Assembly: GCF_001194135.2 (NCBI RefSeq)
Contig: NC_069003.1
Coordinates: 26,595,106-26,659,105 of the forward strand
DNA from: Octopus bimaculoides
Taxonomy: Eukaryota
DNA length: 64,000 nucleotides
Direction: 5' to 3'
Shown here: positions 4,187 to 63,105 of the stretch, piece after piece
How the letters are laid out: each line of letters opens with the position of its first letter
Position numbering within the stretch: the first letter of the stretch is position 1
The notes under the pieces: model-generated
The model's input: the letters and a program-made list of their open reading frames with translations, nothing else
The model's database searches: none
What the model was told of the DNA's origin: nothing
Made by a program: the position numbers and the translations under genes

Positions 4187-5936
4187 AAAAATAGGCAGGT
4201 TTTCATCAATGGTAATTACAGATTTTAAATCTCAGTCACTCACCCAATCTAACAGCATTGTTCCCGACACCCCAGCATCTTAGTCTTCATGTGATAGTGG
4301 GAGNNNNNNNNNNNNNNNNNNNNNNNNNNNNNNNNNNNNNNNNNNNNNNNNNNNNNNNNNNNNNNNNNNNNNNNNNNNNNNNNNNNNNNNNNNNNNNNNN
4401 NNNNNNNNNNNNNNNNNNNNNNNNNNNNNNNNNNNNNNNNNNNNNNNNNNNNNNNNNNNNNNNNNNNNNNNNNNNNNNNNNNNNNNNNNNNNNNNNNNNN
4501 NNNNNNNNNNNNNNNNNNNNNNNNNNNNNNNNNNNNNNNNNNNNNNNNNNNNNNNNNNNNNNNNNNNNNNNNNNNNNNNNNNNNNNNNNNNNNNNNNNNN
4601 NNNNNNNNNNNNNNNNNNNNNNNNNNNNNNNNNNNNNNNNNNNNNNNNNNNNNNNNNNNNNNNNNNNNNNNNNNNNNNNNNNNNNNNNNNNNNNNNNNNN
4701 NNNNNNNNNNNNNNNNNNNNNNNNNNNNNNNNNNNNNNNNNNNNNNNNNNNNNNNNNNNNNNNNNNNNNNNNNNNNNNNNNNNNNNNNNNNNNNNNNNNN
4801 NNNNNNNNNNNNNNNNNNNNNNNNNNNNNNNNNNNNNNNNNNNNNNNNNNNNNNNNNNNNNNNNNNNNNNNNNNNNNNNNNNNNNNNNNNNNNNNNNNNN
4901 NNNNNNNNNNNNNNNNNNNNNNNNNNNNNNNNNNNNNNNNNNNNNNNNNNNNNATTATAATAATAATAATACAAGATATAAAAAAATAATATAAAATAAA
5001 ACTTGCAAAAATTTATAAAAAATTTAACTAAATATGATAAAAAAAATTTAGAAGCTGGACATTGATAAGAGAATTATTATTATTATTATTATTATTAGAA
5101 GATTATTGTTATTATTAATATTTATATATTCAATTTTGCATTCATTCTTTGTCACAAGGCAGCAGCTGTTTTACAGATTTTAAATCTCAGTCACTCACCC
5201 AATCTAACAGCATTGTTCCCGACACCCCAGCATCTTAGTCTTCATGTGATAGTGGGAGGTGATGCAGGGTGTACGAGGGGGTGCACAGGACAGGCCCTGA
5301 AACCACGACTTATGAGCTAACGAAACAAACACTCATTAATTGCAGGGTTTTCCCAACTTTTGCACAGTGGCAAGCTGAGTAGTCCCTCTGGCATCCAAGT
5401 GGACTGAGCTAGCGAAGAGTGAGGGCAGGGCGACAACCTGGCCATAGTGACCCATTTTAACAAACCTGAGACTAGGAGAAGGAGAGTGTGTGGTTATTAG
5501 AGGTGGTGGGCTTCAGCTAATTCATTGAGTGAGAGAGAAGGAGAGTGGAGTGTTGATTGGTGCAAACAGAGGACATAGGTGAGATAAGGTATATGAGTGG
5601 AATATTAGAGCTTTGAGTGTGGTTGACGAGTGTAGCTGATTTCATTACAATTTACTTCTTCAGGTCAATAACTGTTCTAAAGGGTGTGTGTGTGTGTGTA
5701 TGTATATATATATATATATATACACACATACCCACACACACATACATATATATATATGCACACATATACATACATATAAATATACATATATACACACATG
5801 CATATATATACATATATACACACATGCATATATATATATACACATACATATATATATATATATACACATACATACATATATACACACATACATATATATA
5901 CACACATACATATATATAGATATACACACATACATA

Positions 5937-5980
<44 letters not shown>

Positions 5981-6096
5981 AACACACACAGATATATATA
6001 CATGCACACACTACATATATATATATATACATACACACACTGAGGATAATATGTAGTTCCTTCATTCATTAATAACAAACATTGTCTTACTTTCAG

Positions 6097-6134
6097 ATCA
6101 CTCAAGACCTGTTACTGTGAGGAAGGTGGCTAAG
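6097..6134 (+). CDS. Candidate internal exon of an unidentified plus-strand gene (HSRPVTVRKVAK)
   Basis: Strong sites CTTACTTTCAG| and AAG|GTAAGT; one open frame, phase 1 in and phase 0 out; non-repetitive sequence. Confidence 0.45.
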
Positions 6135-6661
6135 GTAAGTGAATCAACACCACCACTTCTCGTATGTACAACTGCCGCTAAGCATTTTGCCAGGCGCAGT
6201 AACGATTTTGCCAATTCACCGCCTCACAATAACAACAACTTATAATAGCAAGAGGCCAAAAATCAGGTGGGAGGTATTGGTCGACTATAATGATCCCAAA
6301 TTCTTAAATGGTCGTTAAGAATTTATCTGGAGAGATAAAAGGCAGAATTGAGCTTGGTAGAGTTTGAACCCACAATGTAAAATGCCGGAACAAATAGCAC
6401 AAGGTATTTTGGTATTTCATGCAATATTCTAATGATTCTGCTGATACACTGCTTGTATAACAAATAACAATAGGGTTTTCTAAGATAGGCAGCAGACCAT
6501 AGGGAGATAGATATGTTCAATTATAGCAAATAATTCACAGCTCTGTGTGTGTGTGTGTGTGTGTGTGTGTATAAATAACCATGTGTATATATAAACAAAC
6601 TTACATTCGCTTTTGAGAAATGTCAAATGTGTATTGTACGATACAGACAAAAAGGGTGATA

Positions 6662-6826
6662 TTTCGAATGCAGTATCACCGTTAAAACAGCAGAATAATT
6701 GTGTATTATTACTCTTACAAGACGGAAAAAGTTGTCAACAAACAACCATGGGACAACCTTTTCCGCTTTATAAGGGTAATAATACCTAATCATTCTGCTG
6801 CTTTAATGGTGACAGTGCTTTTGAAA
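6662..6826. mobile_element. Foldback MITE (75-bp arms, 15-nt loop)
   Basis: 6662-6736 is the imperfect reverse complement of 6752-6826; TA-rich flanks. Confidence 0.65.
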
Positions 6827-7277
6827 CATATATATATATATATATAAATTATCTTTATCCTATGATATTTACTTTGTATTATATTATATTCATTTATTGT
6901 GCTTTTAATTGTTAATTTTTCTATATATGATAGTGGATTTTCATCGATGAGTTCATGAAACTTGGTTCTTTTCCCTAAAACTATATATTTATATATATTT
7001 TAATCTGTAAAGCTCAATTTAATTTTAATTTTTTATAAATTGATTTTAATTGAGTTTTTACTCGTAATTTTGGATTTTATCCCTAATATATATATATATA
7101 TATATACATATAGTATAATTGCTATACTTTTACAAGATGAGGGATGATAAAGGCGTCCAAGTTTCAGCCTACTACAGAAAATATTGAATAATTCTTCAGA
7201 TTAATGTTAAATTGTTTCTCTTATAGCTTAACATAAAAACAAATGTTAACTGTTTTGTTACCAAATTTCTGTTAAAA

Positions 7278-7498
7278 CCTTTCGTTACTGTATTTATTTT
7301 GAGATGCTGTGTTTCTTTCAATTACTTTAAATATAACAAAGAATTTAGTAGAATAATTTAGTTATCATTATGTCTTAGTGTTAGGAACATAAATTGTGAC
7401 TAAGGTTTGGTGGGAGGTTTTAATTCAAAACTTATGAAAAAGAAGACATTTGTACTACAGAGCCAGAGCCAGTTTCAGCCGGGTTGGTGACAAAAGGG
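7278..7498. mobile_element. piggyBac-like MITE
   Basis: Ends (C)CTTTCGTTAC / GTGACAAAAGGG with TTAA-like flanks. Confidence 0.5.
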
Positions 7499-8434
7499 TT
7501 AAACTATACTGCCTTTAACTGTTATTATTAAGCTGGTGTATGGAATATAAATTAACATAAATTAACAAGGAATTTTGGTGGAAGGTTTTGACACAGATCC
7601 CTTTAAAACAAGAGGTTTGCATCATGAAATNNNNNNNNNNNNNNNNNNNNNNNNNNNNNNNNNNNNNNNNNNNNNNNNNNNNNNNNNNNNNNNNNNNNNN
7701 NNNNNNNNNNNNNNNNNNNNNNNNNNNNNNNNNNNNNNNNNNNNNNNNNNNNNNNNNNNNNNNNNNNNNNNNNNNNNNNNNNNNNNNNNNNNNNNNNNNN
7801 NNNNNNNNNNNNNNNNNNNNNNNNNNNNNNNNNNNNNNNNNNNNNNNNNNNNNNNNNNNNNNNNNNNNNNNNNNNNNNNNNNNNNNNNNNNNNNNNNNNN
7901 NNNNNNNNNNNNNNNNNNNNNNNNNNNNNNNNNNNNNNNNNNNNNNNNNNNNNNNNNNNNNNNNNNNNNNNNNNNNNNNNNNNNNNNNNNNNNNNNNNNN
8001 NNNNNNNNNNNNNNNNNNNNNNNNNNNNNNNNNNNNNNNNNNNNNNNNNNNNNNNNNNNNNNNNNNNNNNNNNNNNNNNNNNNNNNNNNNNNNNNNNNNN
8101 NNNNNNNNNNNNNNNNNNNNNNNNNNNNNNNNNNNNNNNNNNNNNNNNNNNNNNNNNNNNNNNNNNNNNNNNNNNNNNNNNNNNNNNNNNNNNNNNNNNN
8201 NNNNNNNNNNNNNNNNNNNNNNNNNNNNNNNNNNNNNNNNNNNNNNNNNNNNNNNNNNNNNNNNNNNNNNNNNNNNNNNNNNNNNNNNNNNNNNNNNNNN
8301 NNNNNNNNNNNNNNNNNNNNNNNNNNNNNNNNNNNNNNNNNNNNNNNNNNNNNNNNNNNNNNNNNNNNNNNNNNNNNNNNNNNNNNNNNNNNNNNNNNNN
8401 NNNNNNNNNNNNNNNNNNNNNNNNNNNNNNNNNN

Positions 8435-8473
<39 letters not shown>

Positions 8474-8530
8474 ATGTAAACCTACATAGTGGTCATACAA
8501 ACATGGCCAAATTTAATTATTTCTCTGCAG

Positions 8531-8680
8531 ATTGAAAAAAAAGTGACGAGCAGCCTAAATCAATTTTCAAACCTTATTGAACTCTCATCAGAGGTGTCTG
8601 CATCACTTGGTGCCAATCCCAGAGAAATGAGTAGCCAATCTGTTTATATACACAACAAATCCAGTAGCTTCAGCGAATAG
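8531..8680 (+). CDS. Candidate terminal coding exon of the same plus-strand gene (IEKKVTSSLNQFSNLIELSSEV...SSSFSE*)
   Basis: TTTTCTCTGCAG| acceptor; only phase 0 is open (49 aa to TAG), which fits the 6097-6134 exon. No family recognised. Confidence 0.4.
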   Translation: MEKKVTSSLNQFSNLIELSSEVSASLGANPREMSSQSVYIHNKSSSFSE

Positions 8681-9034
8681 GAGTGATTAGCTTGCATACT
8701 ATACATTTTGTTCTGTACAGTAAAAAAAGAAACAACAGCTATGCTCAATGTCTATATTTATTTAAACATATGTGTGTTAATAGCATAATATAATTAATAA
8801 TTAGTAACTAATATCGAATAATATTTAATTTTTGAATAGACATGAAGTTTAATGTTCATTTAAAGTATCAGCTTTGATATATATGGTGCCTATAATATTT
8901 TATACACAGTGGAGCTGATGAAGGGCCAACTGAGTCCAAAGGTAGATTGACTCACCTGTGCGGGGTACAAAACCAGATCGAACCTAATTCCCTACCATCT
9001 GTGCCAAACCAACTCCCCTAATAACGGTGTCAAA

Positions 9035-9657
9035 TTTTGGCACAAGGCCAAGATTTTCGGGGGAGGCTTAGGGTAAAGTGATTACATTGACCCCCCCAGT
9101 GCTCAACTGGTGCTTATTTTATTAACCCTGGAAGGATGAAAGGCAAAGTTGACCTCGGTGGAATTCAAACTCAGAATGTAAAGACGGACAAAATGTTGCT
9201 AAGCGATTTGTTTTGGTATGCTAACAATTCTGCCAACTTTCACTTTCATCTTTTATACCTTAATAATAATAGTAATTTTTTTCTACCTAAGGCCTGAAAT
9301 TTGGTGGGAAAGTGAGGTTAGTCGTTTTCATCAACCCCAGTGCTAACTGGTAGTTATTGTATCAGCCCTGAAAGGATAAAAAATAAAAGCCAGCCTCAAC
9401 AGCATTTGAACTCAAATACCACTGAGTATTCTGTTAGGCATGGTAAACATTCTGTCAGTTCATTGCCTTAATTTTGGGGGAGGTGATAAGTCGATTACAT
9501 CAACCCCAGTACTTAACTGGTACTTATTTTTATCAACCCCCGAAAGGATGAAAGGCAATGTCAACCCCGACGGTGTTTGAACCCAGAACCTGAAGACAGA
9601 CAAAATTCCGCTAAGCATTTTTTCCCTGGCATGCTAACAATTCTGCCAGCTCACCAC

Positions 9658-9708
<51 letters not shown>

Positions 9709-10077
9709 TTTTCTAACAGAAGCACAAGGCCTGAAATTTGGGTGAGGAAGTGGGGTTAGTCAGTCAATTAAATTGACCCTAATATTTGACTGGCACTTTT
9801 ATTTCATCGATCTCCAAAAAAGGATGAAAGCAAAGCTGATCCTGGTGGGATTTGGACCCTGAATATAAAGAGCCAGAAGGAATACCACAAAGCATTTTGT
9901 CCGTTGCTCTAACAATTCTGCTAATCCATCTCCTTCAAAAATCACACTAGTAATAGTACTACGACTAAATACTAAAATATTACTACCAATAATAATAATG
10001 ATAATAAAAATATTAATAACAAATAATATCAATAACAAATAATGAAAAAGATAATAATAATAATGATAATAATAGTA

Positions 10078-10113
<36 letters not shown>

Positions 10114-10377
10114 GTAATGGTAATAATAATAATAATGGTTTCAAATTTTGGCACAAGGCCAGCATTTTTTTTAGGGGAAAGGGTAAATCAATATCATTGA
10201 CTCCATTGTTTGACTGGTACTTATTTTATAGACCACCCCACCCCTGAGAGGATGAAAGGGGTAAGTCAACCTCGGCAGTATTTGAACTCAGACCAAAAAG
10301 CCGGGAGAAAGAACTACTGCCAAGCATTTCGTCTGGCGTGGGGGAAATGTTTTTTCTGCCAGCCAGCTCGCCGCCTA

Positions 10378-10378
<1 letters not shown>
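9035..10378 (-). mobile_element. Cluster of five co-oriented SINE B copies separated by (AAT)n
   Basis: Copies at ~9035-9245, 9280-9470, 9470-9657, 9706-9930 and 10138-10378. Confidence 0.75.
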
Positions 10379-10408
<30 letters not shown>

Positions 10409-11101
10409 NNNNNNNNNNNNNNNNNNNNNNNNNNNNNNNNNNNNNNNNNNNNNNNNNNNNNNNNNNNNNNNNNNNNNNNNNNNNNNNNNNNNNNNNNNNN
10501 NNNNNNNNNNNNNNNNNNNNNNNNNNNNNNNNNNNNNNNNNNNNNNNNNNNNNNNNNNNNNNNNNNNNNNNNNNNNNNNNNNNNNNNNNNNNNNNNNNNN
10601 NNNNNNNNNNNNNNNNNNNNNNNNNNNNNNNNNNNNNNNNNNNNNNNNNNNNNNNNNNNNNNNNNNNNNNNNNNNNNNNNNNNNNNNNNNNNNNNNNNNN
10701 NNNNNNNNNNNNNNNNNNNNNNNNNNNNNNNNNNNNNNNNNNNNNNNNNNNNNNNNNNNNNNNNNNNNNNNNNNNNNNNNNNNNNNNNNNNNNNNNNNNN
10801 NNNNNNNNNNNNNNNNNNNNNNNNNNNNNNNNNNNNNNNNNNNNNNNNNNNNNNNNNNNNNNNNNNNNNNNNNNNNNNNNNNNNNNNNNNNNNNNNNNNN
10901 NNNNNNNNNNNNNNNNNNNNNNNNNNNNNNNNNNNNNNNNNNNNNNNNNNNNNNNNNNNNNNNNNNNNNNNNNNNNNNNNNNNNNNNNNNNNNNNNNNNN
11001 NNNNNNNNNNNNNNNNNNNNNNNNNNNNNNNNNNNNNNNNNNNNNNNNNNNNNNNNNNNNNNNNNNNNNNNNNNNNNNNNNNNNNNNNNNNNNNNNNNNN
11101 N

Positions 11102-11791
11102 CTGAGGACCCTGCATGTAGACCCCTTGGTTGGGCGGTTGCTGAGTCGGCGGCTTCCTTGCTGTTTGCGGACTTCCAGCGCCAGGGCTGTCAGAATGGCG
11201 AACAATCGGTATGACACGTTCCCCAGTGTTTTGACCTCCAGCTTGATGAGACGGACTACTGGTCCATGACCCTTGGAAACCGGCTGGTTGTTGTCCATGT
11301 TGATAATTAAACGGATGCTGAGGATGTGGGTGTTGCTGCTGCTGCTGATGCTGTGTTGGTGGCGGCTGTTGTTGCTGTGGTGATGCTGGCTGCTGTTGGC
11401 GGTGGGGCATAGTACTTGTCGGGTGAGGCTGACCCTGGAAGTGAGGGTAGTTGAATGCTGGTGTATGCTGGAAGTGTGTCGTGTAATGTGGCCGAGGTGG
11501 CTCTGCCGGTTGTGAATTGCTGCCAATGTGTTGGATTGGGATCTCTCGAGCTTCAGAAGCGCCAGGATACTGGTGGCCGCTCTGCTGTTGCGGTGGTTGC
11601 GGGGGTGGTGCTGGTTGTCGGTATTGGTAATGTGCTGACGGTGTTGGCACTGTGTGGACAGGAATCTGTCGAGGTTGAGCAGAACTGTAGCCAGCTTGAG
11701 GAGTGTAAGCAGAAGACATCTCGTGATTGACTGGGATTTCTACCATCTTCCCACTTTGATTCTGGTACGGATTTTGGAAAAACCTTTGCGG
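11102..11791 (-). CDS. BAG3: BAG3-like exon 2 (>=230 aa), P/Q/H-rich with four IPV/IPI motifs; 3' end lost in gap
   Basis: Polypyrimidine tract and TTTCCAG| acceptor at 11792; phase 0 matches exon 1. Reads PQRFFQNPYQNQSGKMVEIPVNHE...RQIPVHTV...REIPIQHI...RVIPIVRH...GVYMQGPQ and is open up to the N-gap at 11101. Confidence 0.85.
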
Positions 11792-13073
11792 CTGGAAATA
11801 GAATAAAAAGAGAGAAGAAAAAAAGGTAGAATTAGTGAGAAATATTCCACAAAATGCAACAATGAGAAAGAATTCTTTTTTTTTTTTTAACTAGTAACAA
11901 AAAGTAACTACAGTCACAGACAAGGCTCTGTGGTTAAAAAGCTTACTTCCTATCCAAAGGGTCTTGGGTTCAGTCCTACTGTACAGTACCCTGGGCAGGT
12001 GACTTCTACTATAGCTCTGAGCTGATCAGAACCTTGTGAGTGAATTTAATTGATGGAAACTAAAAGAAGTCTATCATGCTTACGTGTGTGTGTGTGTGTG
12101 TGTGATTTTTTGTTTGTGTACATCCTTGTCTAGACATCACATGATGGTTGTAAATGAGCATCGACCATCATACAAGTGAGGTTGTTTGTTTCCAGTCTTG
12201 TGTGGAAAAAAACATGCCTATAGCTATATGGGAAAATAATATTACCTTGCTTGGAAAACAGGTGAGGGCTGGCAAAAGGTATATAAAAAAAAAAAAAAAA
12301 GCATCCGGCTATAGAAAATCTGCCTCAGTGTATTACAACTGATCCATGTAAGCATGGAGAACTGGATGTTTTCAATGATGAAAACCTTTTGACTCTGGGT
12401 GAAGCGAGGCGGGGGGAGCAATAGATCTAGAAACGGTACATATAATTAGAAATATCACTGCTTCTTCTGTTATAGCTACAATAGTCACCACCGAGGTTGT
12501 TGTTATTGTTTCCTGTTGTAACTAGATTAAAGTCTGACTCACCCACAGATCCAATATTCTCGATACAGCAACAACAACTGATATGACAATTAAAAGGGGC
12601 CGTGGGGGGCCACCCAACCATGAAATACGCTTCCCCTTGCTAATGATCACGACTCCAATGAACAGACGAACCGTGAATGTTGTTAAGGAAAAACAACATT
12701 AATTAACTCCTCCTTCCAATGAAATCCTAAGGGATCCAGAGAAAGTAGGGAGACCATCTATTAATTCATCCCCTTCACCTACACTTCCTGGCCTTTGTGG
12801 CAGATTACTCAATCAGGGTTTCAATCAAAGCACAGTGTTTCACACACACGAGAGGCGTGTGTATATGTGTGTGTGTGTGTTAGAGCTGTGTGTGAATGTG
12901 TTTATGTGCATACATGTATATATATATATATTCAGGACATATATATTCATTAGGTTTTATTTATATATATTAGGCATGAGTATATGCAATACAAGATTGT
13001 GCGAGTGTGTACACCAATATATATGTATGATATATATATATATATGTATGTATATGTGTGTGTGTGTATATAT

Positions 13074-16200: not shown

Positions 16201-17107
16201 GGACTCATTGGACATAGGTAAAATTATATAAAAAAATGTGTCCCTTGTTATGACAAATTTTTCTGCTGGCAGCACTACATCTGTCCAATGTAATGGATGT
16301 GTAAATAGATTCATATAAATGTACTCAATAAACCTTTAGAATTCAAAGAATCTATGATTTTCTTCCTTTCAAATCAAGGAGGTAACCCCTCAGTGTAGAT
16401 AAATAGATTTTGCAGTAAATGGTGGACACAATCATAACTTTTTTTCCCATATGACGCTAACACACAAATTTAGTGGAGAATAAAATTTTATGCCGTCACA
16501 CTTAGCTATTCAACCACAAGGTCACAGGTTAAATTGATTTGGTTTGGTCTGTCTCATATTCACTAAAATGTGTCAGCCTTAATTTTTAGTGTAAAAAATA
16601 CTGTCATATGATGTTTAAGAATGGACGTGATACTATGTATGAATTCACTGGCAAAAATTTCCGAAACTAATCAAGCGATCATCCTCAGGCAATCAGATCG
16701 TATTGCAAAACTGATATAGCAATGCCTCTATACATGAGTTAATTTGTACCCGGAAACTGCTCGTAAAGCAGAGCAAATAATTTCCCATATAAGCAATGTC
16801 ATAAATTGCAATTCATTCTCAGAGAAATATTTTACCTATAAAATTTATAACACTTGTAAGTAAATGGCAATAAAACAACCGTAGAATGTAAAGAATATTT
16901 TATGTAAAGTAATAAGAATGTCAAGATCATTTATAATTAAAAAAATATTATTATTGTTATTATTATTATTATCGTTTTCTGAATCACTTTCACTTGCATT
17001 ATTGACTTGTGCACACCATCACCTGTGGATGTGATTGCTGGTTCACAAGTACTCATAGAAGGACTTGTAGTCTAGAGTTGTTTGCTTAGAAGAACCATTT
17101 TTTTTTA

Positions 17108-47640: not shown

Positions 47641-48599
47641 CATACTAACACTACACATACACATTAACACACACACACACTTATAGGTAATCTGTGTAAG
47701 TGTGTGTGTGCAAGATCTAATAACACATCATGGGCATATACACCATAAAGAGGAAGACTAGATTGAGTAAATTAAATTGTAATGTCGCTTCTCGTAAAAT
47801 CATTTACTCACATACACTCTGTGGGTGTACACGCATTACGCGACCTGTGTACGAGAACGTGCATCCCCCGCAGAGCGGCCACACTAAAGTGACCACAAGT
47901 AATATGGACAGGTCGCGGTTTCAAAGCGACGAAGATATTTTGACACAAATGAAATTTAAATGTTGAAGCGAATCTAACGGTTTTTTTTTTTGTGTTCTTA
48001 AATGGCTTATAAACATCTTCCACGCTGCAGTTGTATATATGTATATATATGCCCTGCCTTGGCCTCTCTTAGATCTGGCGGAACCCGTCCTTTTTCATGA
48101 CTGCTTTTAGAAAAAAGACAGAGAGCTTTATAGCTTTTACTTGTTTTAGTTACTGGACTGCGGTCATATTGGGACACTGCCTTGAAGGGTGTAGTCAAAC
48201 AAATCGATTCCATTACTTTTTTTTTCAAGTCTGGTACTTATTTTATTGATTTTTGTTGTTGTTGTTGCCAGATCGCTGTTACAAGGCGTAAACAAACCAA
48301 CATCGGTAGTCAAGCGGCAAGAGGGGACTAACATATACTATGTATGTATGTATGTATGTATTCTTACAAGCGATGGGCTTTCACATAGTTTCCAGCTACC
48401 AAATTCACTCACAAGGAATTGGTCGGCCCAGGGCTATAGTAGAAGACACTTATCGAAAGTGCCGTGCCATGGAACTGAATTCAAAACCACATAGCTAAAC
48501 AATCTTCTTAACCCGAAAGCTATGCCTGCGTAATATCTCATCATCATAATCACCATGTATGTATATATATAACATGAAATTAATGAAAATCAGGAGAAC

Positions 48600-48847
48600 A
48601 GAGATTTGCACGTCCATATTTTATTATAGAATTATTTACATCATTCTTCACGCGGACCTACGCACGTTTCGGCTGCAATTGCTACATATTGTTAAGTGTG
48701 CATGTTGGTGTTGTCGGTGCAGCTTCTTCAGGGTCCGTTGTTTACTGCTGTTTGAAGACCATCTGAAGAAAACTATGGGACTGACCGAATTGGAGTCCTA
48801 AAGGATGATGTAAATAACTATAATAAAATATGGATGTGCAAATTTCG
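48600..48847. mobile_element. Penelope-like pseudo-LTR remnant bounded by ~48-bp inverted repeats
   Basis: 48600-48650 is the near reverse complement of 48799-48847. It encloses the hammerhead and a decayed CTGAAGA...CGAA...GTC motif on the opposite strand. Confidence 0.55.
48653..48737 (-). ncRNA. Type I hammerhead ribozyme (minimal-helix-III, Penelope-type)
   Basis: Minus strand: CGGACC-CUGAAGA-A-GCUGCA-(40 nt)-UGCAGC-C-GAAA-CG-UG-CG-UA|GGUCCG. Helix I is 6 bp, helix II 6 bp and helix III 3 bp; the core is intact with a GUA cleavage triplet. Confidence 0.8.
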
Positions 48848-48869
48848 ATCACACCTTTGATGATGTAGT

Positions 48870-49185
48870 CTTGACTGGCACTCCATCGGTTATGATGATG
48901 AGGGTTCAAGGTGATTCAATCAGCGGAACAGCCGGCTTGTGAAATTAACATGCAAGTGGTTGAGTACTCCAGACACGCGTGCCCTTAATGTAGTTCTTAG
49001 GGAGATTCAGTGTGGCACAGAATGTGACAAGACTGGCCCCTTTGAATTACTCATTTTTGCCAGCAGAGTGCACTGGAGTAACACGAAATAAAGTGTCTAG
49101 CTCAAGGACACAACCTGCTGCCAGGAATTGAACTCACAACCTTACGATCATGAGCCAAATACTCTAACCATTAAACCATACAGTT
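48870..49185 (-). mobile_element. SINE C
   Basis: Family match. Confidence 0.7.
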
Positions 49186-49298
49186 TCACAATGTATGATG
49201 GGCATGGCCGGAACATCTTAGGTCATAGGTTTGCTTGATCACGACTTAACCTGCGCAAAACAACAACAACAACAAATATTTAAAAGTTAAAGGTTATT

Positions 49299-49672
49299 GG
49301 CGCAGGAGTGGCTGTGTGGTAAGTAGCATGCTTACCAACCACATGGTTCCAGGTTCAGTCCCACTGCGTGGCATCTTGGGCAAGTGTCTTCTACTATAGC
49401 CTCCGGCCGACCAAAGCCTTGTGAGTGGATTTGGTAGACAGAAACTGAAAGAAGCCCGTGGTATATATGTATATATATGTGTTTGTCACCCCAACATCGC
49501 TTGACAACCAATGCTGGTGTGTTTACGTCCCCGTAACATAGCGGTTCAGCAAAAGATACCGATAGAATAAGTACTAGGCTTACAAAGAATAAGTCCTGGG
49601 GTTGATTAGCTCGACTAAAAAGGAGGTGCTCCAGCATGGCCACAGTCAAATGACTGAAACAAGTAAAAGAGT
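49299..49672 (+). mobile_element. SINE A, full length
   Basis: Head to tail match. Confidence 0.8.
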
Positions 49673-50090
49673 GAACACTATGATAACTTTGGTTTATATC
49701 TGTTCCAAGATGAGAGACAGAGAGGTGGAGAAGAGACAGACAGACAGAGAGGGTGGGAGAGAGACAGACATTGAAAATTGGTACATACAAAACTGTTTTA
49801 TCTGCATTCTATATCTCAACAGGAATTTATATGGAATTTATTATTTTGAGGTAGAGTTATTTAATCGAGGGAGGCGCATCCATACTAATAACCATTTCAG
49901 TTTTCATCCCCTCACTCCAGAGAAGTCAGTGTCCATAGCCTTTCATTTCAATGCAGAGAGGGAAGTGCCGACATCCTTTCCAGGTACCCACCTTCCAGTC
50001 TAGAGAGACCCGTGGCAGTTGAAGTACTGTCATTATGCCCTATGGTCACTGTAATTCTGAAGGGTTTCAATTAATTTGAAAAAAATGATT

Positions 50091-50489
50091 GGCTGTGTGG
50101 TAAGAAGTTTGCTTCCCAACCACATGGTTCCAGGTTCAGTCCCACTGTGTGGCGCCTTGGACAAGTATCTTCTACTATAGCTTTGGGTGGACCGAAGCCT
50201 TGTGAGTGGATTTGGGAGAGAGAAACTTAAAGAAGCCCATGGTATATATATATCTATGGCTGTGTGTGTCTTTTTGTCTGTGTTTGTCTCCAGCCATAGC
50301 TTGATAACTGGTGTTGGTGTGTTTACATCCCCATAACGTAACGGTCCAGGAAAAGAGACCAATAGAATAAGTACCAGGTTCACAAAATCTAATAAGTACT
50401 GGGGTCAATAAGTTCCACTAAAAACCCTTCAAGGTGGTGCACCAGCATGGTCGCAGTCTAATGACTGAAATAAGTAAAAGATAAAAGAC
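50091..50489 (+). mobile_element. SINE A variant
   Basis: Head to tail match with a variant 3' part. Confidence 0.7.
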
Positions 50490-50514
50490 ATACAAAATAC
50501 ACACACAAACATCT

Positions 50515-50551
<37 letters not shown>

Positions 50552-50569
50552 AACATATATATATATATG

Positions 50570-50820
50570 AAGGTGCACGGCTCAGTGGTTAGAGCGTCGA
50601 GCTTATGATCGTGAGGTTGTGAGTTCGATTCCCTGACCGGGCTGCATGTTGTATTCTTGAGCAAGATACTTTATTTCACATTGCTCCAGTTAACTCAGCT
50701 GTAGAAATGAGTTGCGACGTCACAGGTGCCAAGTTGTATTGGCCTTTGCCTTTCCCTTGGACAACATCGGTGGCATGGAGAGGGGAGGCCGGTATGCATG
50801 GGCGACTGGTGGCCTTCCAC
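50570..50820 (+). mobile_element. SINE C variant (related copy at 35865-36060)
   Basis: GGCTCAGTGG / GAGTTCGATTCCC boxes; different 3' body. Confidence 0.7.
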
Positions 50821-62808: not shown

Positions 62809-63105
62809 CGTTGTAGCTAATCTGGGGTCCTGCCAAGTGGTTTGTTTGGTGTTGTGATCAATGTAATAAGCCCAGCCAGTGGTGGGATCAATCCTCCGTT
62901 CCCATCCAGCTGGTAGATCTCCAAGGTTCGAACCTGCGGCCGCTGCCCCACCACCTGGTGGTTCGTTGCCATTGTTGTTGTTAGTGTTGTGATGGGGATG
63001 CTGGTATTGCTGTTGATGAAGGTTGTGGCCGCTGCTGGCCGCCGCACTCGTGTTGTTGTTGTTGTTGTTATGAGGTGGATGCGACATATATCCCATTCCA
63101 GACAT
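62809..63105 (-). CDS. BAG3: BAG3-like co-chaperone, first coding exon (99 aa): N/H/Q low-complexity leader plus WW domain (62821-62916)
   Basis: Reads MSGMGYMSH...[36 protein letters not shown]. The WW domain closely matches vertebrate BAG3 ([32 protein letters not shown], recalled), including IDPxTGW. First in-frame ATG at 63105; donor ACG|GTGAGT at 62808, phase 0. Confidence 0.88.

What the first reader, a model, noticed from the sequence alone, without database searches (positions are those of the whole stretch)
48653..48737. Intact type I hammerhead ribozyme on the pre-mRNA strand of the BAG3 intron
Seen: every core element is present in type I order on the minus strand (helix I CGGACC/GGUCCG, CUGAAGA, helix II GCUGCA/UGCAGC with an A.C pair at 10.1-11.1 and a 40-nt loop, GAAA, 3-bp helix III with a 2-nt loop, GUA triplet). 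The predicted cut is between 48659 and 48658. It sits inside 48-bp inverted repeats with a decayed opposite-strand hammerhead. Known: Penelope-like elements carry such minimal hammerheads, which often cleave as dimers, and intronic self-cleaving ribozymes exist in animal genes (e.g. CPEB3). Inference: it is transcribed in every long BAG3 pre-mRNA and lies ~1.4 kb upstream of a candidate internal promoter, so cleavage could affect only the WW-containing isoform. The long helix II loop could supply a tertiary contact or allow regulation.
Basis: partly seen in the sequence, partly recalled or inferred. Interest (0 to 1): 0.8.

Follow-up and report, generated by a model that had tools for sequence, protein, structure and literature searches.

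The report
Transposon-derived minimal hammerhead in octopus BAG3 intron
The hammerhead ribozyme motif is really there and is not a chance match, but it is one copy of an old dispersed repeat, most likely left by a Penelope-like retrotransposon, and nothing shows that it cuts or regulates the BAG3 transcript.

Summary
The minus strand 48737..48653 carries every invariant hammerhead core base in type I order, at the stated coordinates. A structural descriptor finds this one site in the window, against 0.01 expected in random windows.

"Intact" is too strong:
- Helix III is only 2 bp with a 4-nt loop. A 2-nt hairpin loop cannot form.
- Position 10.1-11.1 is A.C, not the conserved G-C.
- No Rfam hammerhead model scores it, even at E<=10.
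- The 85-nt motif folds no better than shuffles (z -0.07).
- In the transcript, a foldback hairpin (-84.1 kcal/mol, z -8.6) beats any hammerhead-keeping fold by 11.7 kcal/mol.
- The window holds no same-strand partner for a dimer.

The segment 48574-48800 belongs to a low-copy repeat family (about 5-45 copies at 80% likeness or more) present in three octopus species. Paralogs differ by about 15-20%. The hammerhead core equals the family consensus and the 40-nt loop is hypervariable.

Its features match published minimal hammerheads of Penelope-like elements, which show no detectable cleavage as single motifs. No orthologous conservation was found, and no RNA reads cover the site.

Verdict: a transposon relic, a new member of a known kind, with low interest. 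The gene context is supported: the sense strand of an intron of a WW/BAG gene.

The parts
48653..48737 (-). Type I minimal hammerhead motif (helix I, CUGAAGA, helix II with a 40-nt loop, GAAA, vestigial helix III, GUA; predicted cut 3' of A48659)
   Evidence: Sequence read and parsed. It is the only descriptor hit in the window, against 0.01 expected. No Rfam hit.
48725..48731 (-). Core C3-A9 (CUGAAGA), followed by A48724. That A is either A10.1 opposite C11.1 (48671) or the PLE-type extra base after A9.
   Evidence: In about 15 paralogous contigs only single contigs differ here, so this is the family consensus.
48678..48717 (-). 40-nt loop closing helix II. It is the hypervariable part of the family, with substitutions and TTAA/TTAAA/AC/C insertions in paralogs.
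   Evidence: other-letter and indel tables. Alignments of paralogs break here (loose ends at 48678 and 48711).
48659..48670 (-). G12 A13 A14, the near-palindrome ACGUGCGU (helix III and loop 3), and A17
   Evidence: Self-duplex of ACGUGCGU is -8.8 kcal/mol, against -13.3 for the perfect palindrome ACGCGCGU.
48574..48800 (-). Segment homologous to a low-copy dispersed repeat family (TE relic). Paralogs run on past 48574 with the consensus AAGGACTGCATAGTTTCCGTAGAGAAAATA, so this copy is truncated there.
   Evidence: Depth is 5-45 times single copy at 80% likeness or more, in organism A and in two related species. The boundary is seen in 14-19 contigs per run, 6 in X18.
48601..48648 (.). Right arm of the 48-bp inverted repeat (the stretch 3' of the hammerhead on the minus strand). 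It is the most abundant segment of the family.
   Evidence: Highest depth is at 48594-48632.
48801..48846 (.). Left arm of the inverted repeat. Only a few paralogs have it.
   Evidence: Depth is 3-5 contigs in organism A and 0-4 in the other species.
48746..48800 (+). Inner part of the opposite arm, with CTGAAGA at 48763-48769. It is not demonstrably a hammerhead. The head-to-head junction is shared by paralogs.
   Evidence: Arm similarity is not above shuffles. Paralog loose ends read TTCGAAGATCATCTGAAGAAAACTATG, or CTAAAGA / CTCAAGA in place of CTGAAGA.
48552..48573 (.). TA/TG-rich microsatellite abutting the truncated end of the element
   Evidence: A TATGTA indel polymorphism at 48557 is seen in other individuals.
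48385..48495 (.). Flanking very high-copy SINE-like repeat
   Evidence: Raw-read depth is about 11,000-59,000 against a single-copy expectation below 1.
48866..49198 (.). Flanking very high-copy SINE-like repeat, with other copies in the window
   Evidence: Depth in the thousands. Copies in the window at 57993-57917, 24385-24311, 18986-18909 and others.
62818..63105 (-). Upstream coding exon with the WW domain (gene context)
   Evidence: Pfam PF00397, E 1.7e-12. Coordinates.
11102..11791 (-). Downstream coding exon with IPV motifs. It runs into assembly gap 10409-11101, which hides the BAG domain (gene context).
   Evidence: 87% identical to O. sinensis Samui-like BAG protein with PF02179. The exon is 92.6% identical to L001 at DNA level.

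Best explanation
This is a relic copy of an old, low-copy retroelement family of octopuses. The family carries a 'minimal' type I hammerhead of the kind found in the pseudo-LTRs of Penelope-like elements (PLEs) and their non-autonomous derivatives.

In the active element, the hammerhead would have worked as a dimer. Two copies in a multimeric or tandem transcript pair their near-palindromic helix III (ACGUGCGU) and cut 3' of GUA, which processes the element's RNA.

This copy is truncated, solitary and embedded in a foldback. It was inserted or carried into an intron of the BAG3/Samui-like gene and later hemmed in by SINE insertions. It is transcribed passively with the pre-mRNA. There the foldback hairpin sequesters CUGAAGA and both strands of helix I, and no partner for helix III is available. 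Self-cleavage is therefore expected to be negligible and has no role in BAG3 isoform control.

Shown:
- the motif
- membership of a repeat family in three species
- the hammerhead core equals the family consensus, and the loop is variable
- the competing fold
- the gene context

Inferred:
- the PLE origin (no RT/GIY-YIG ORF could be linked)
- the dimer mechanism
- the lack of activity
For: Motif and non-chance.

Repeat family:
- Raw DNA reads pile up to about 4-20 times the expected single-copy depth over 48575-48790 at 80% likeness or more.
- Logan contigs of organism A give about 6-45 copies along the segment.
- The same paralogs are present in organisms B and C, for example a 552-nt contig over 48574-48797 with 34 substitutions and 5 gaps.
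- Paralogs share the head-to-head junction and a common continuation beyond 48574.
- Only single contigs differ at the core positions. The loop 48678-48713 is full of substitutions and indels. That pattern fits past selection on a ribozyme whose distal helix II was free to vary.

PLE-type features as listed in PMC4209133:
- helix II of 6 bp
- an extra base after A9
- short open helix I
- near-palindromic 15.2-16.2 and loop 3
- families of variable, mostly solitary motifs

PLE biology:
- PMC8557442: PLE insertions are 5'-truncated, often with an adjacent inverted 5'-truncated copy. Hammerheads sit in the pseudo-LTR near the 3' end.
- PMC13282606: Octopus vulgaris has 31 PLE families, with a PLE burst at JC distance 0.2. 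That matches the 15-20% divergence of the paralogs.

Inactivity:
- Single minimal hammerheads gave no detectable cleavage in vitro, and dimers only low activity (PMC4209133).
- The foldback has MFE -84.1 (z -8.6), against -72.4 for the best fold that keeps the hammerhead.
- The isolated motif has z -0.07.
- No second same-strand motif is in the window.
- No Rfam hit.
Against: - No reverse transcriptase or GIY-YIG ORF was linked to the family, so 'Penelope-like' is an inference from ribozyme architecture and insertion structure.
- The family consensus has an unpaired or mismatched C (48671) between helix II and G12. Together with A48724 this gives A.C instead of the G10.1-C11.1 pair that PMC4209133 reports as highly conserved. 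The family is therefore atypical even among PLE hammerheads.
- Paralogs share the same head-to-head junction. Independent PLE insertions with variable truncation points would not obviously produce this.
- The family's full unit length is unknown.
- Inactivity is predicted, not measured. Co-transcriptional folding or protein factors could allow some cleavage.
Confidence: 0.7

Rival explanations
1. One reading: a functional intronic self-cleaving ribozyme. It cuts long BAG3 pre-mRNAs between 48659 and 48658 and so lowers the WW-containing isoform relative to a shorter isoform from a downstream promoter. The 40-nt loop would act as a tertiary contact or sensor.
For: - All invariant core bases are present on the sense strand of the intron.
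- The core is identical to the family consensus, so it is not visibly decayed.
- A WW-less 379-aa product is on record in O. sinensis.
- Two depth-2 'RNA?' contigs leave a gap at 48621-48663 that contains the predicted site. This is anecdotal.
Against: - It is a member of a dispersed repeat family.
- No contig of organisms B or C covers the unique junction 48854-48872, and none matches the element at 95% or more over its length.
- Helix III is vestigial, and no partner copy lies on the same strand.
- 10.1-11.1 is A.C.
- The foldback is favoured by 11.7 kcal/mol, and its antisense arm is transcribed first.
- The loop is the least conserved part.
- No Rfam HH9, HH10 or Hammerhead_1 score.
- Published single minimal hammerheads do not cleave detectably (PMC4209133).
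- 0 reads lie on the region among about 36 million sampled RNA reads.
Confidence: 0.05
2. A hammerhead-bearing repeat that is not Penelope-derived. It could be a monomer of a non-LTR retrozyme or satellite, a SINE-like element, or a foldback/MITE-type DNA element that captured a hammerhead-containing fragment. Copies would have spread by another mechanism or by segmental duplication.
For: - No PLE ORF was linked.
- Paralogs share one fixed head-to-head junction.
- A 48-bp inverted repeat and a strong foldback are present.
- The A.C next to the core is atypical for PLE minimal hammerheads.
- A 2026 preprint argues that animal retrozymes derive from PLE pseudo-LTRs, so the categories overlap.
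Against: - There is no tandem repetition at this locus or in the window, which is the defining retrozyme arrangement.
- The left inverted-repeat arm is missing from most paralogs, and the family runs on past 48574. The 48-bp repeats are therefore not the family's termini.
- Copy number rises towards the hammerhead-distal end, as in 5'-truncated retroelements.
Confidence: 0.2
3. A chance resemblance to a hammerhead in AT-rich intronic sequence.
For: No Rfam model recognises it. The isolated 85-nt fold is no more stable than shuffles.
Against: - The descriptor gives 0.01 hits per random window, and the single real hit has 6-bp helices I and II.
- The same core is kept in about 15 paralogous contigs in three species, while the loop between the core halves varies.
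Confidence: 0.02

Closest known systems
Minimal hammerheads (min-HHRs) of metazoan Penelope-like elements (Cervera & de la Pena 2014, PMC4209133)
   Same: - Type I topology
- Open, short helix I without a defined loop 1
- Long (6-bp) helix II
- An extra base after A9
- Vestigial helix III whose 15.2-16.2 and loop 3 are (near-)palindromic, implying dimeric action
- Occurrence as variable, mostly solitary copies
- Not detected by standard models
   Different: - Next to G12 there is an additional C, so the position reads A.C instead of the conserved G10.1-C11.1.
- Helix II is capped by a 40-nt variable loop.
- The palindrome has two G.U pairs.
- No PLE ORF or pseudo-LTR was linked here.
- The held literature describes no hammerheads in cephalopods.
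Dimeric type I hammerheads of newt satellite 2 and Schistosoma Sm-alpha, and metazoan non-LTR retrozymes (PMC7229834; own knowledge for the newt sequence)
   Same: Helix III of 2 bp with a 4-nt loop that forms a stable helix only between two tandem copies. ACGCGCGU in newt compares with ACGUGCGU here.
   Different: - Those are tandem arrays giving multimeric transcripts and circular RNAs.
- They have loop 1-loop 2 tertiary contacts.
- Here there is a single copy, no tandem, and no recognisable loop-loop contact.
Conserved intronic ribozymes of amniotes: HH9 and HH10 hammerheads (Rfam RF02275, RF02277) and the CPEB3 HDV-like ribozyme (own knowledge)
   Same: A self-cleaving-ribozyme motif on the sense strand of an intron of a protein-coding gene.
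   Different: - Those are single-locus, orthologously conserved, fold stably as monomers and cleave in vitro.
- This one is a repeat-family copy with no detected ortholog, an unstable helix III and a competing foldback.
- The Rfam HH9/HH10 models do not match it.

Membership tests
Hammerhead ribozyme (type I) | Invariant core C3 U4 G5 A6 N7 G8 A9 / G12 A13 A14 / A15.1-U16.1 / H17, in type I order | tested here: met
   CUGAAGA 48731-48725, GAA 48670-48668, A48667-U48660, A17 48659
Hammerhead ribozyme (type I) | Three helices around the core | tested here: inconclusive
   Helices I and II have 6 bp each. Helix III is only 2 bp with a 4-nt loop as a monomer, because a 2-nt loop is disallowed. It reaches 8 bp only as an intermolecular dimer.
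Hammerhead ribozyme (type I) | G10.1-C11.1 pair next to the core | tested here: not met
   A48724 lies opposite C48671. Shifting the register does not restore the pair (inspection). The same bases are the family consensus.
Hammerhead ribozyme (type I) | Score at or above gathering with an Rfam hammerhead covariance model (RF00163, RF00008, RF02275-7) | tested here: not met
   No hammerhead match at gathering score. None at E<=10 on 601-nt and 101-nt stretches.
Hammerhead ribozyme (type I) | Site-specific self-cleavage 3' of H17 | not testable with these tools
   0 RNA reads on the region in three runs. Contig data are uninformative.
PLE minimal hammerhead (PMC4209133) | Extra nucleotide between A9 and 10.1, and a long helix II (6-8 bp) | tested here: inconclusive
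   A48724 fits the extra base and helix II has 6 bp. However, an unpaired C48671 on the 3' side is not part of the published consensus.
PLE minimal hammerhead (PMC4209133) | Palindromic 15.2-16.2 and loop 3, allowing a dimeric helix III | tested here: met
   ACGUGCGU pairs with itself through 6 Watson-Crick and 2 G.U pairs, -8.8 kcal/mol.
PLE minimal hammerhead (PMC4209133) | Many variable copies per genome that form consensus families | tested here: met
   About 5-45 copies at 80% likeness or more in each of three species. The core is conserved and the loop is variable. The copy number is low compared with the thousands reported in some genomes.
PLE minimal hammerhead (PMC4209133) | Location in the pseudo-LTR of an element encoding RT and GIY-YIG endonuclease | not testable with these tools
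   No such ORF was seen among the long ORFs of the window. No domain search for RT or GIY-YIG was run. Sequences of paralogs could not be retrieved; only difference tables and 30-nt loose ends were available.
Metazoan non-LTR retrozyme | Tandem repeats of 170-400-nt units, each with a type I hammerhead | tested here: not met
   No direct repeat of the motif at the locus. No second copy in the 64-kb window.
Conserved functional intronic ribozyme (HH9/HH10/CPEB3-like) | Orthologous conservation at the same intron position across species | tested here: inconclusive
   - Unique intron segments nearby have contigs at about 88-91% identity in species B and C.
- No B or C contig covers the junction 48854-48872.
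- None matches the element better than paralogs do.
- Short-contig data cannot prove absence.
Conserved functional intronic ribozyme (HH9/HH10/CPEB3-like) | Stable monomeric active fold in the native transcript | tested here: not met
   Isolated motif z -0.07. The native context prefers the foldback by 11.7 kcal/mol.

The most novel reading that the evidence does not exclude
The motif has been co-opted. Despite its repeat origin, it would cleave the BAG3/Samui pre-mRNA co-transcriptionally, for instance in trans-dimers or with protein help. The flanking foldback would act as an on/off switch, giving isoform-specific control of a stress-chaperone cofactor in octopus.
Probability: 0.04. Interest if true: 0.75.

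Novelty: new member of a known kind. Interest (0 to 1): 0.2.

Why it matters
The finding adds a cephalopod example to the known spread of minimal, dimer-dependent hammerheads left by Penelope-like or retrozyme-type elements in animal genomes. It shows a family variant with an A.C (or doubly bulged) junction next to the core and a long variable helix II cap.

It does not open a new question about gene regulation. It matters mainly as a caution: a complete hammerhead core in an intron is not evidence of a regulatory ribozyme when the motif is a repeat copy with no partner and a competing fold. If the minority reading were true, it would be the first invertebrate intronic hammerhead with a host function.

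Tried and rejected
- **Rfam.** Scans at gathering score and at E<=10 on three nested ranges gave no hammerhead. Only sub-threshold snoRNA and lncRNA noise appeared.
- **RNA end mapping.** Three raw RNA-seq runs, about 6% sampled each, gave 0 reads on 48496-48865. 'RNA?' contigs have depth 2 and prove nothing. Run X7 behaves like DNA.
- **Splice and exon mapping.** It was still counted, so no calls remain.
- **Ortholog retrieval.** The O. sinensis locus of the BAG exon (L001) is syntenic only with window 4954-11880. It holds no copy of the element.
- **Published sequences.** Supplements of PMC4209133, with hammerhead sequences for comparison, are not held. No paper on hammerheads in cephalopods was found.
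- **Longer palindrome.** The 13-nt perfect inverted repeat 48537-48549 / 48890-48902 looked like an extension of the palindrome. Its right arm is part of the flanking SINE, produced by CpG decay of TTACGACGTCGAG, so the match is coincidental.
- **Possible dimer partners.** Two further relaxed-descriptor hits, 16688-16634(-) and 8591-8557(-), are at chance level (0.43 expected). They have 3-bp helices and unrelated helix III, so they were rejected.
- **Opposite arm as a second hammerhead.** This is not supported statistically.

Full report
**Observation**

The minus strand 48737..48653 reads CGGACC-CUGAAGA-A-GCUGCA-(40 nt)-UGCAGC-C-GAA-ACG-UG-CGU-A-GGUCCG. This covers the A opposite C next to the core, the 40-nt loop and the GUA triplet. 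The predicted scissile bond lies between 48659 and 48658.

I wrote a structural descriptor: CUGANGA, helix II >=4 bp with optional single bulges, GAAA, helix III >=2 bp, U-H, helix I >=4 bp. It finds this one site on both strands of the window. It finds a mean of 0.01 sites in 200 first-order Markov random windows. The motif is therefore real and not a chance match.

The 48-bp inverted repeats 48601-48648 / 48801-48846 are also real: 89.6% identity, E 4e-12 within the window.

**How intact is it?**

Several points argue against "intact":

- A 3-bp helix III closed by 2 nt cannot form, and ViennaRNA rejects it. As a monomer, helix III is A-U and C-G with a GUGC loop.
- The eight bases ACGUGCGU are a near-palindrome. 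They can pair between two molecules with 6 Watson-Crick and 2 G.U pairs, at -8.8 kcal/mol. The perfect palindrome ACGCGCGU gives -13.3. This is the dimer-dependent design of newt, Schistosoma and Penelope-type hammerheads.
- The pair next to the core is A.C rather than the conserved G10.1-C11.1. If A48724 is read as the "extra base after A9" typical of PLE hammerheads, an unpaired C48671 remains before G12.
- No Rfam hammerhead model (Hammerhead_1, _3, II, HH9, HH10) reports the site. That holds at gathering score over the window. It also holds at E<=10 on 601-nt and 101-nt stretches with lax filters.
- The isolated 85-mer is no more stable than its shuffles: MFE -15.5, z -0.07. Its centroid does keep helices I and II.

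**Context in the transcript**

On the minus strand, the opposite arm of the inverted repeat is transcribed before the hammerhead. The 256-nt unit 48850..48595 folds into one long hairpin of -84.1 kcal/mol (z -8.6, 0 of 200 shuffles as good). In that hairpin:

- CUGAAGA pairs with the upstream UCUUCAG.
- Both strands of helix I pair with the other arm.

The best structure that keeps the three hammerhead helices is 11.7 kcal/mol worse.

The window contains no second same-strand motif that could supply a helix III partner. Two relaxed-descriptor hits at 16.7 kb and 8.6 kb are at chance level and unrelated.

The "decayed opposite-strand hammerhead" is not demonstrable. Apart from the 48-nt tails and the GACC..CTGAAGAA match, similarity between the arms is no better than shuffles.

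**It is a repeat copy**

The flanks 48385-48495 and 48866-49198 are SINE-like repeats present in thousands of copies.

The segment 48574-48800 is a low-copy repeat:

- About 1.9 Gb of raw genomic reads were sampled, which is under 1x for an octopus-sized genome (size from my own knowledge). At 80% likeness or more they give depths of about 3-16 over the segment. The unique left end gives about 0.5-1.
- Logan contigs of organism A give word depths equal to about 6 copies in the loop, about 15 over the 5' half of the hammerhead, and about 45 over the tail 48594-48632.
- The same paralogs exist in two related species. One example is a 552-nt contig over 48574-48797 with 34 substitutions and 5 gaps.
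- Paralogs share the head-to-head junction at about 48745-48775.
- In 14-19 contigs per run (6 in X18), paralogs run on past 48574 with the consensus AAGGACTGCATAGTTTCCGTAGAGAAAATA. The window copy instead stops there against a TA/TG microsatellite. This copy is therefore a truncated fragment of a longer element.

Within the family, the two halves of the hammerhead core show only single-contig differences. A48724 and C48671 are part of the family consensus. The 40-nt "loop" is the most variable part, with several substitutions and TTAA/TTAAA/AC/C insertions. This fits past selection for a ribozyme in the active element. It argues against the loop being a conserved tertiary contact or sensor.

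**Which element?**

The architecture matches the features Cervera and de la Pena list for minimal hammerheads of metazoan Penelope-like elements (PMC4209133):

- long helix II
- an extra base after A9
- short open helix I
- palindromic 15.2-16.2 and loop 3
- highly variable, mostly solitary copies
- some pairs lying 100-700 bp apart on opposite strands

That paper reports no detectable cleavage for a single motif. Dimers gave only low activity, mostly at non-physiological Mg2+.

Craig et al. (PMC8557442) describe PLE insertions as heavily 5'-truncated, often with an inverted 5'-truncated copy adjacent. Hammerheads lie in the pseudo-LTR near the 3' end.

The rise in copy number towards the hammerhead-distal end fits 5' truncation. 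The foldback arrangement fits the PLE insertion pattern.

A repeat annotation of Octopus vulgaris lists 31 PLE families, with a PLE expansion at JC distance 0.2 (PMC13282606). That is close to the 15-20% divergence of the paralogs.

I could not link the family to an RT/GIY-YIG ORF, so the PLE origin is inference. A retrozyme-like or other non-autonomous carrier remains possible. The defining tandem arrangement of retrozymes is absent here.

**Gene context**

- The upstream minus-strand exon 62818-63105 encodes a WW domain (Pfam E 1.7e-12).
- A minus-strand exon begins at a polypyrimidine-CAG acceptor at about 11791. It encodes IPV motifs and a P/Q-rich region, then runs into assembly gap 10409-11101.
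- The combined peptide is 87% identical to Octopus sinensis "BAG domain-containing protein Samui-like", which carries PF02179.
- The O. sinensis locus L001 is syntenic with window 4954-11880. The exon is 92.6% identical and noncoding DNA about 85%.

The window comes from an Octopus species other than O. sinensis.

**Conservation and RNA evidence**

- Unique intron segments near the element have counterparts of about 88-91% identity in the two related species.
- No contig of those species covers the unique left junction 48854-48872. None matches the element better than paralogs do. Short contigs cannot prove absence, so this is evidence against locus conservation, not proof.
- Three raw RNA-seq runs gave no read on 48496-48865 among about 36 million sampled reads.
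- Two depth-2 contigs of a run labelled "RNA?" cover 48496-48620 and 48664-48823. They leave a gap that contains the predicted site, but at that depth this means nothing.
- Another run spans the site without a break and looks like DNA.
The promoter claim is untested.

**Verdict**

The motif is a genuine hammerhead of the minimal, dimer-dependent type.

The best explanation (confidence about 0.7) is a truncated, solitary relic of a PLE-type retroelement family. It is transcribed passively within the BAG3/Samui intron and is expected to be catalytically silent there.

The regulatory reading is not excluded, but nothing supports it (about 0.04-0.05).

It is a new member of a known kind. The only unusual details are the A.C (or doubly bulged) junction at 10.1-11.1, which is fixed in the family, and the long variable cap on helix II.

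Noticed in passing
window 48385-48495, 48866-49198, 49213-49720, 50102-50600: SINE-like repeats at enormous copy number in all three octopus species. Raw-read depth is in the thousands to tens of thousands for 48385-48495 and 48866-49198, and contig word depth reaches 10^6-10^7 further out. Loose-end consensus reads ...GCCCAAGGTGCCACGCAGTGGGACTGAACC.... The hammerhead element is a small island between two such insertions.
   Followed up: partly
window 48574 (family boundary): In 14-19 contigs per run (6 in X18), paralogs of the element run on past 48574 with the consensus AAGGACTGCATAGTTTCCGTAGAGAAAATA. The window copy instead abuts a TA/TG microsatellite. The full unit of the family is therefore longer than what is seen here, and it is unknown.
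   Followed up: partly
window 48745-48775: The head-to-head junction between the hammerhead arm and the opposite arm is shared by paralogs in three species. Independent PLE insertions with variable truncation points would not be expected to give this. The amplified unit itself seems to have been a foldback.
   Followed up: partly
window 10409-11101, and 14 other N runs: Assembly gaps are frequent (15 N runs of 10-804 nt). One lies inside the last large coding exon and hides the BAG domain, which is why Pfam found no BAG domain in the window ORF. The O. sinensis ortholog has PF02179.
   Followed up: yes
window 48557: Other individuals or runs of the same species (X7, X14) carry a 6-nt insertion TATGTA in the microsatellite next to the element.
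   Followed up: no
window 48537-48549 / 48890-48902: A perfect 13-nt inverted repeat (CTCATCATCATAA / TTATGATGATGAG) brackets the unit. The right arm is part of the flanking SINE, where other copies read TTACGACGTCGAG, so CpG decay produced it. The match is coincidental.
   Followed up: yes
window 16634-16688(-) and 8557-8591(-): Two further matches to a very relaxed hammerhead descriptor, with 3-bp helices. They are at the chance level (0.43 expected per window) and unrelated to the family.
   Followed up: yes
window 48621-48663: In run X14 (labelled 'RNA?'), two depth-2 contigs stop on either side of this 43-nt stretch, which contains the predicted cleavage site. The depth is too low to interpret.
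   Followed up: partly
Microsatellite or low-complexity sequence shared with human data is my guess at the cause.
   Followed up: no
L001 10001-11140 (O. sinensis CM016881.1): The only protein on record for the O. sinensis ortholog is a 379-aa WW-less product that starts at the MVEIPV methionine inside the large exon. This may be an ORF-level gene call rather than evidence of a WW-less isoform.
   Followed up: no
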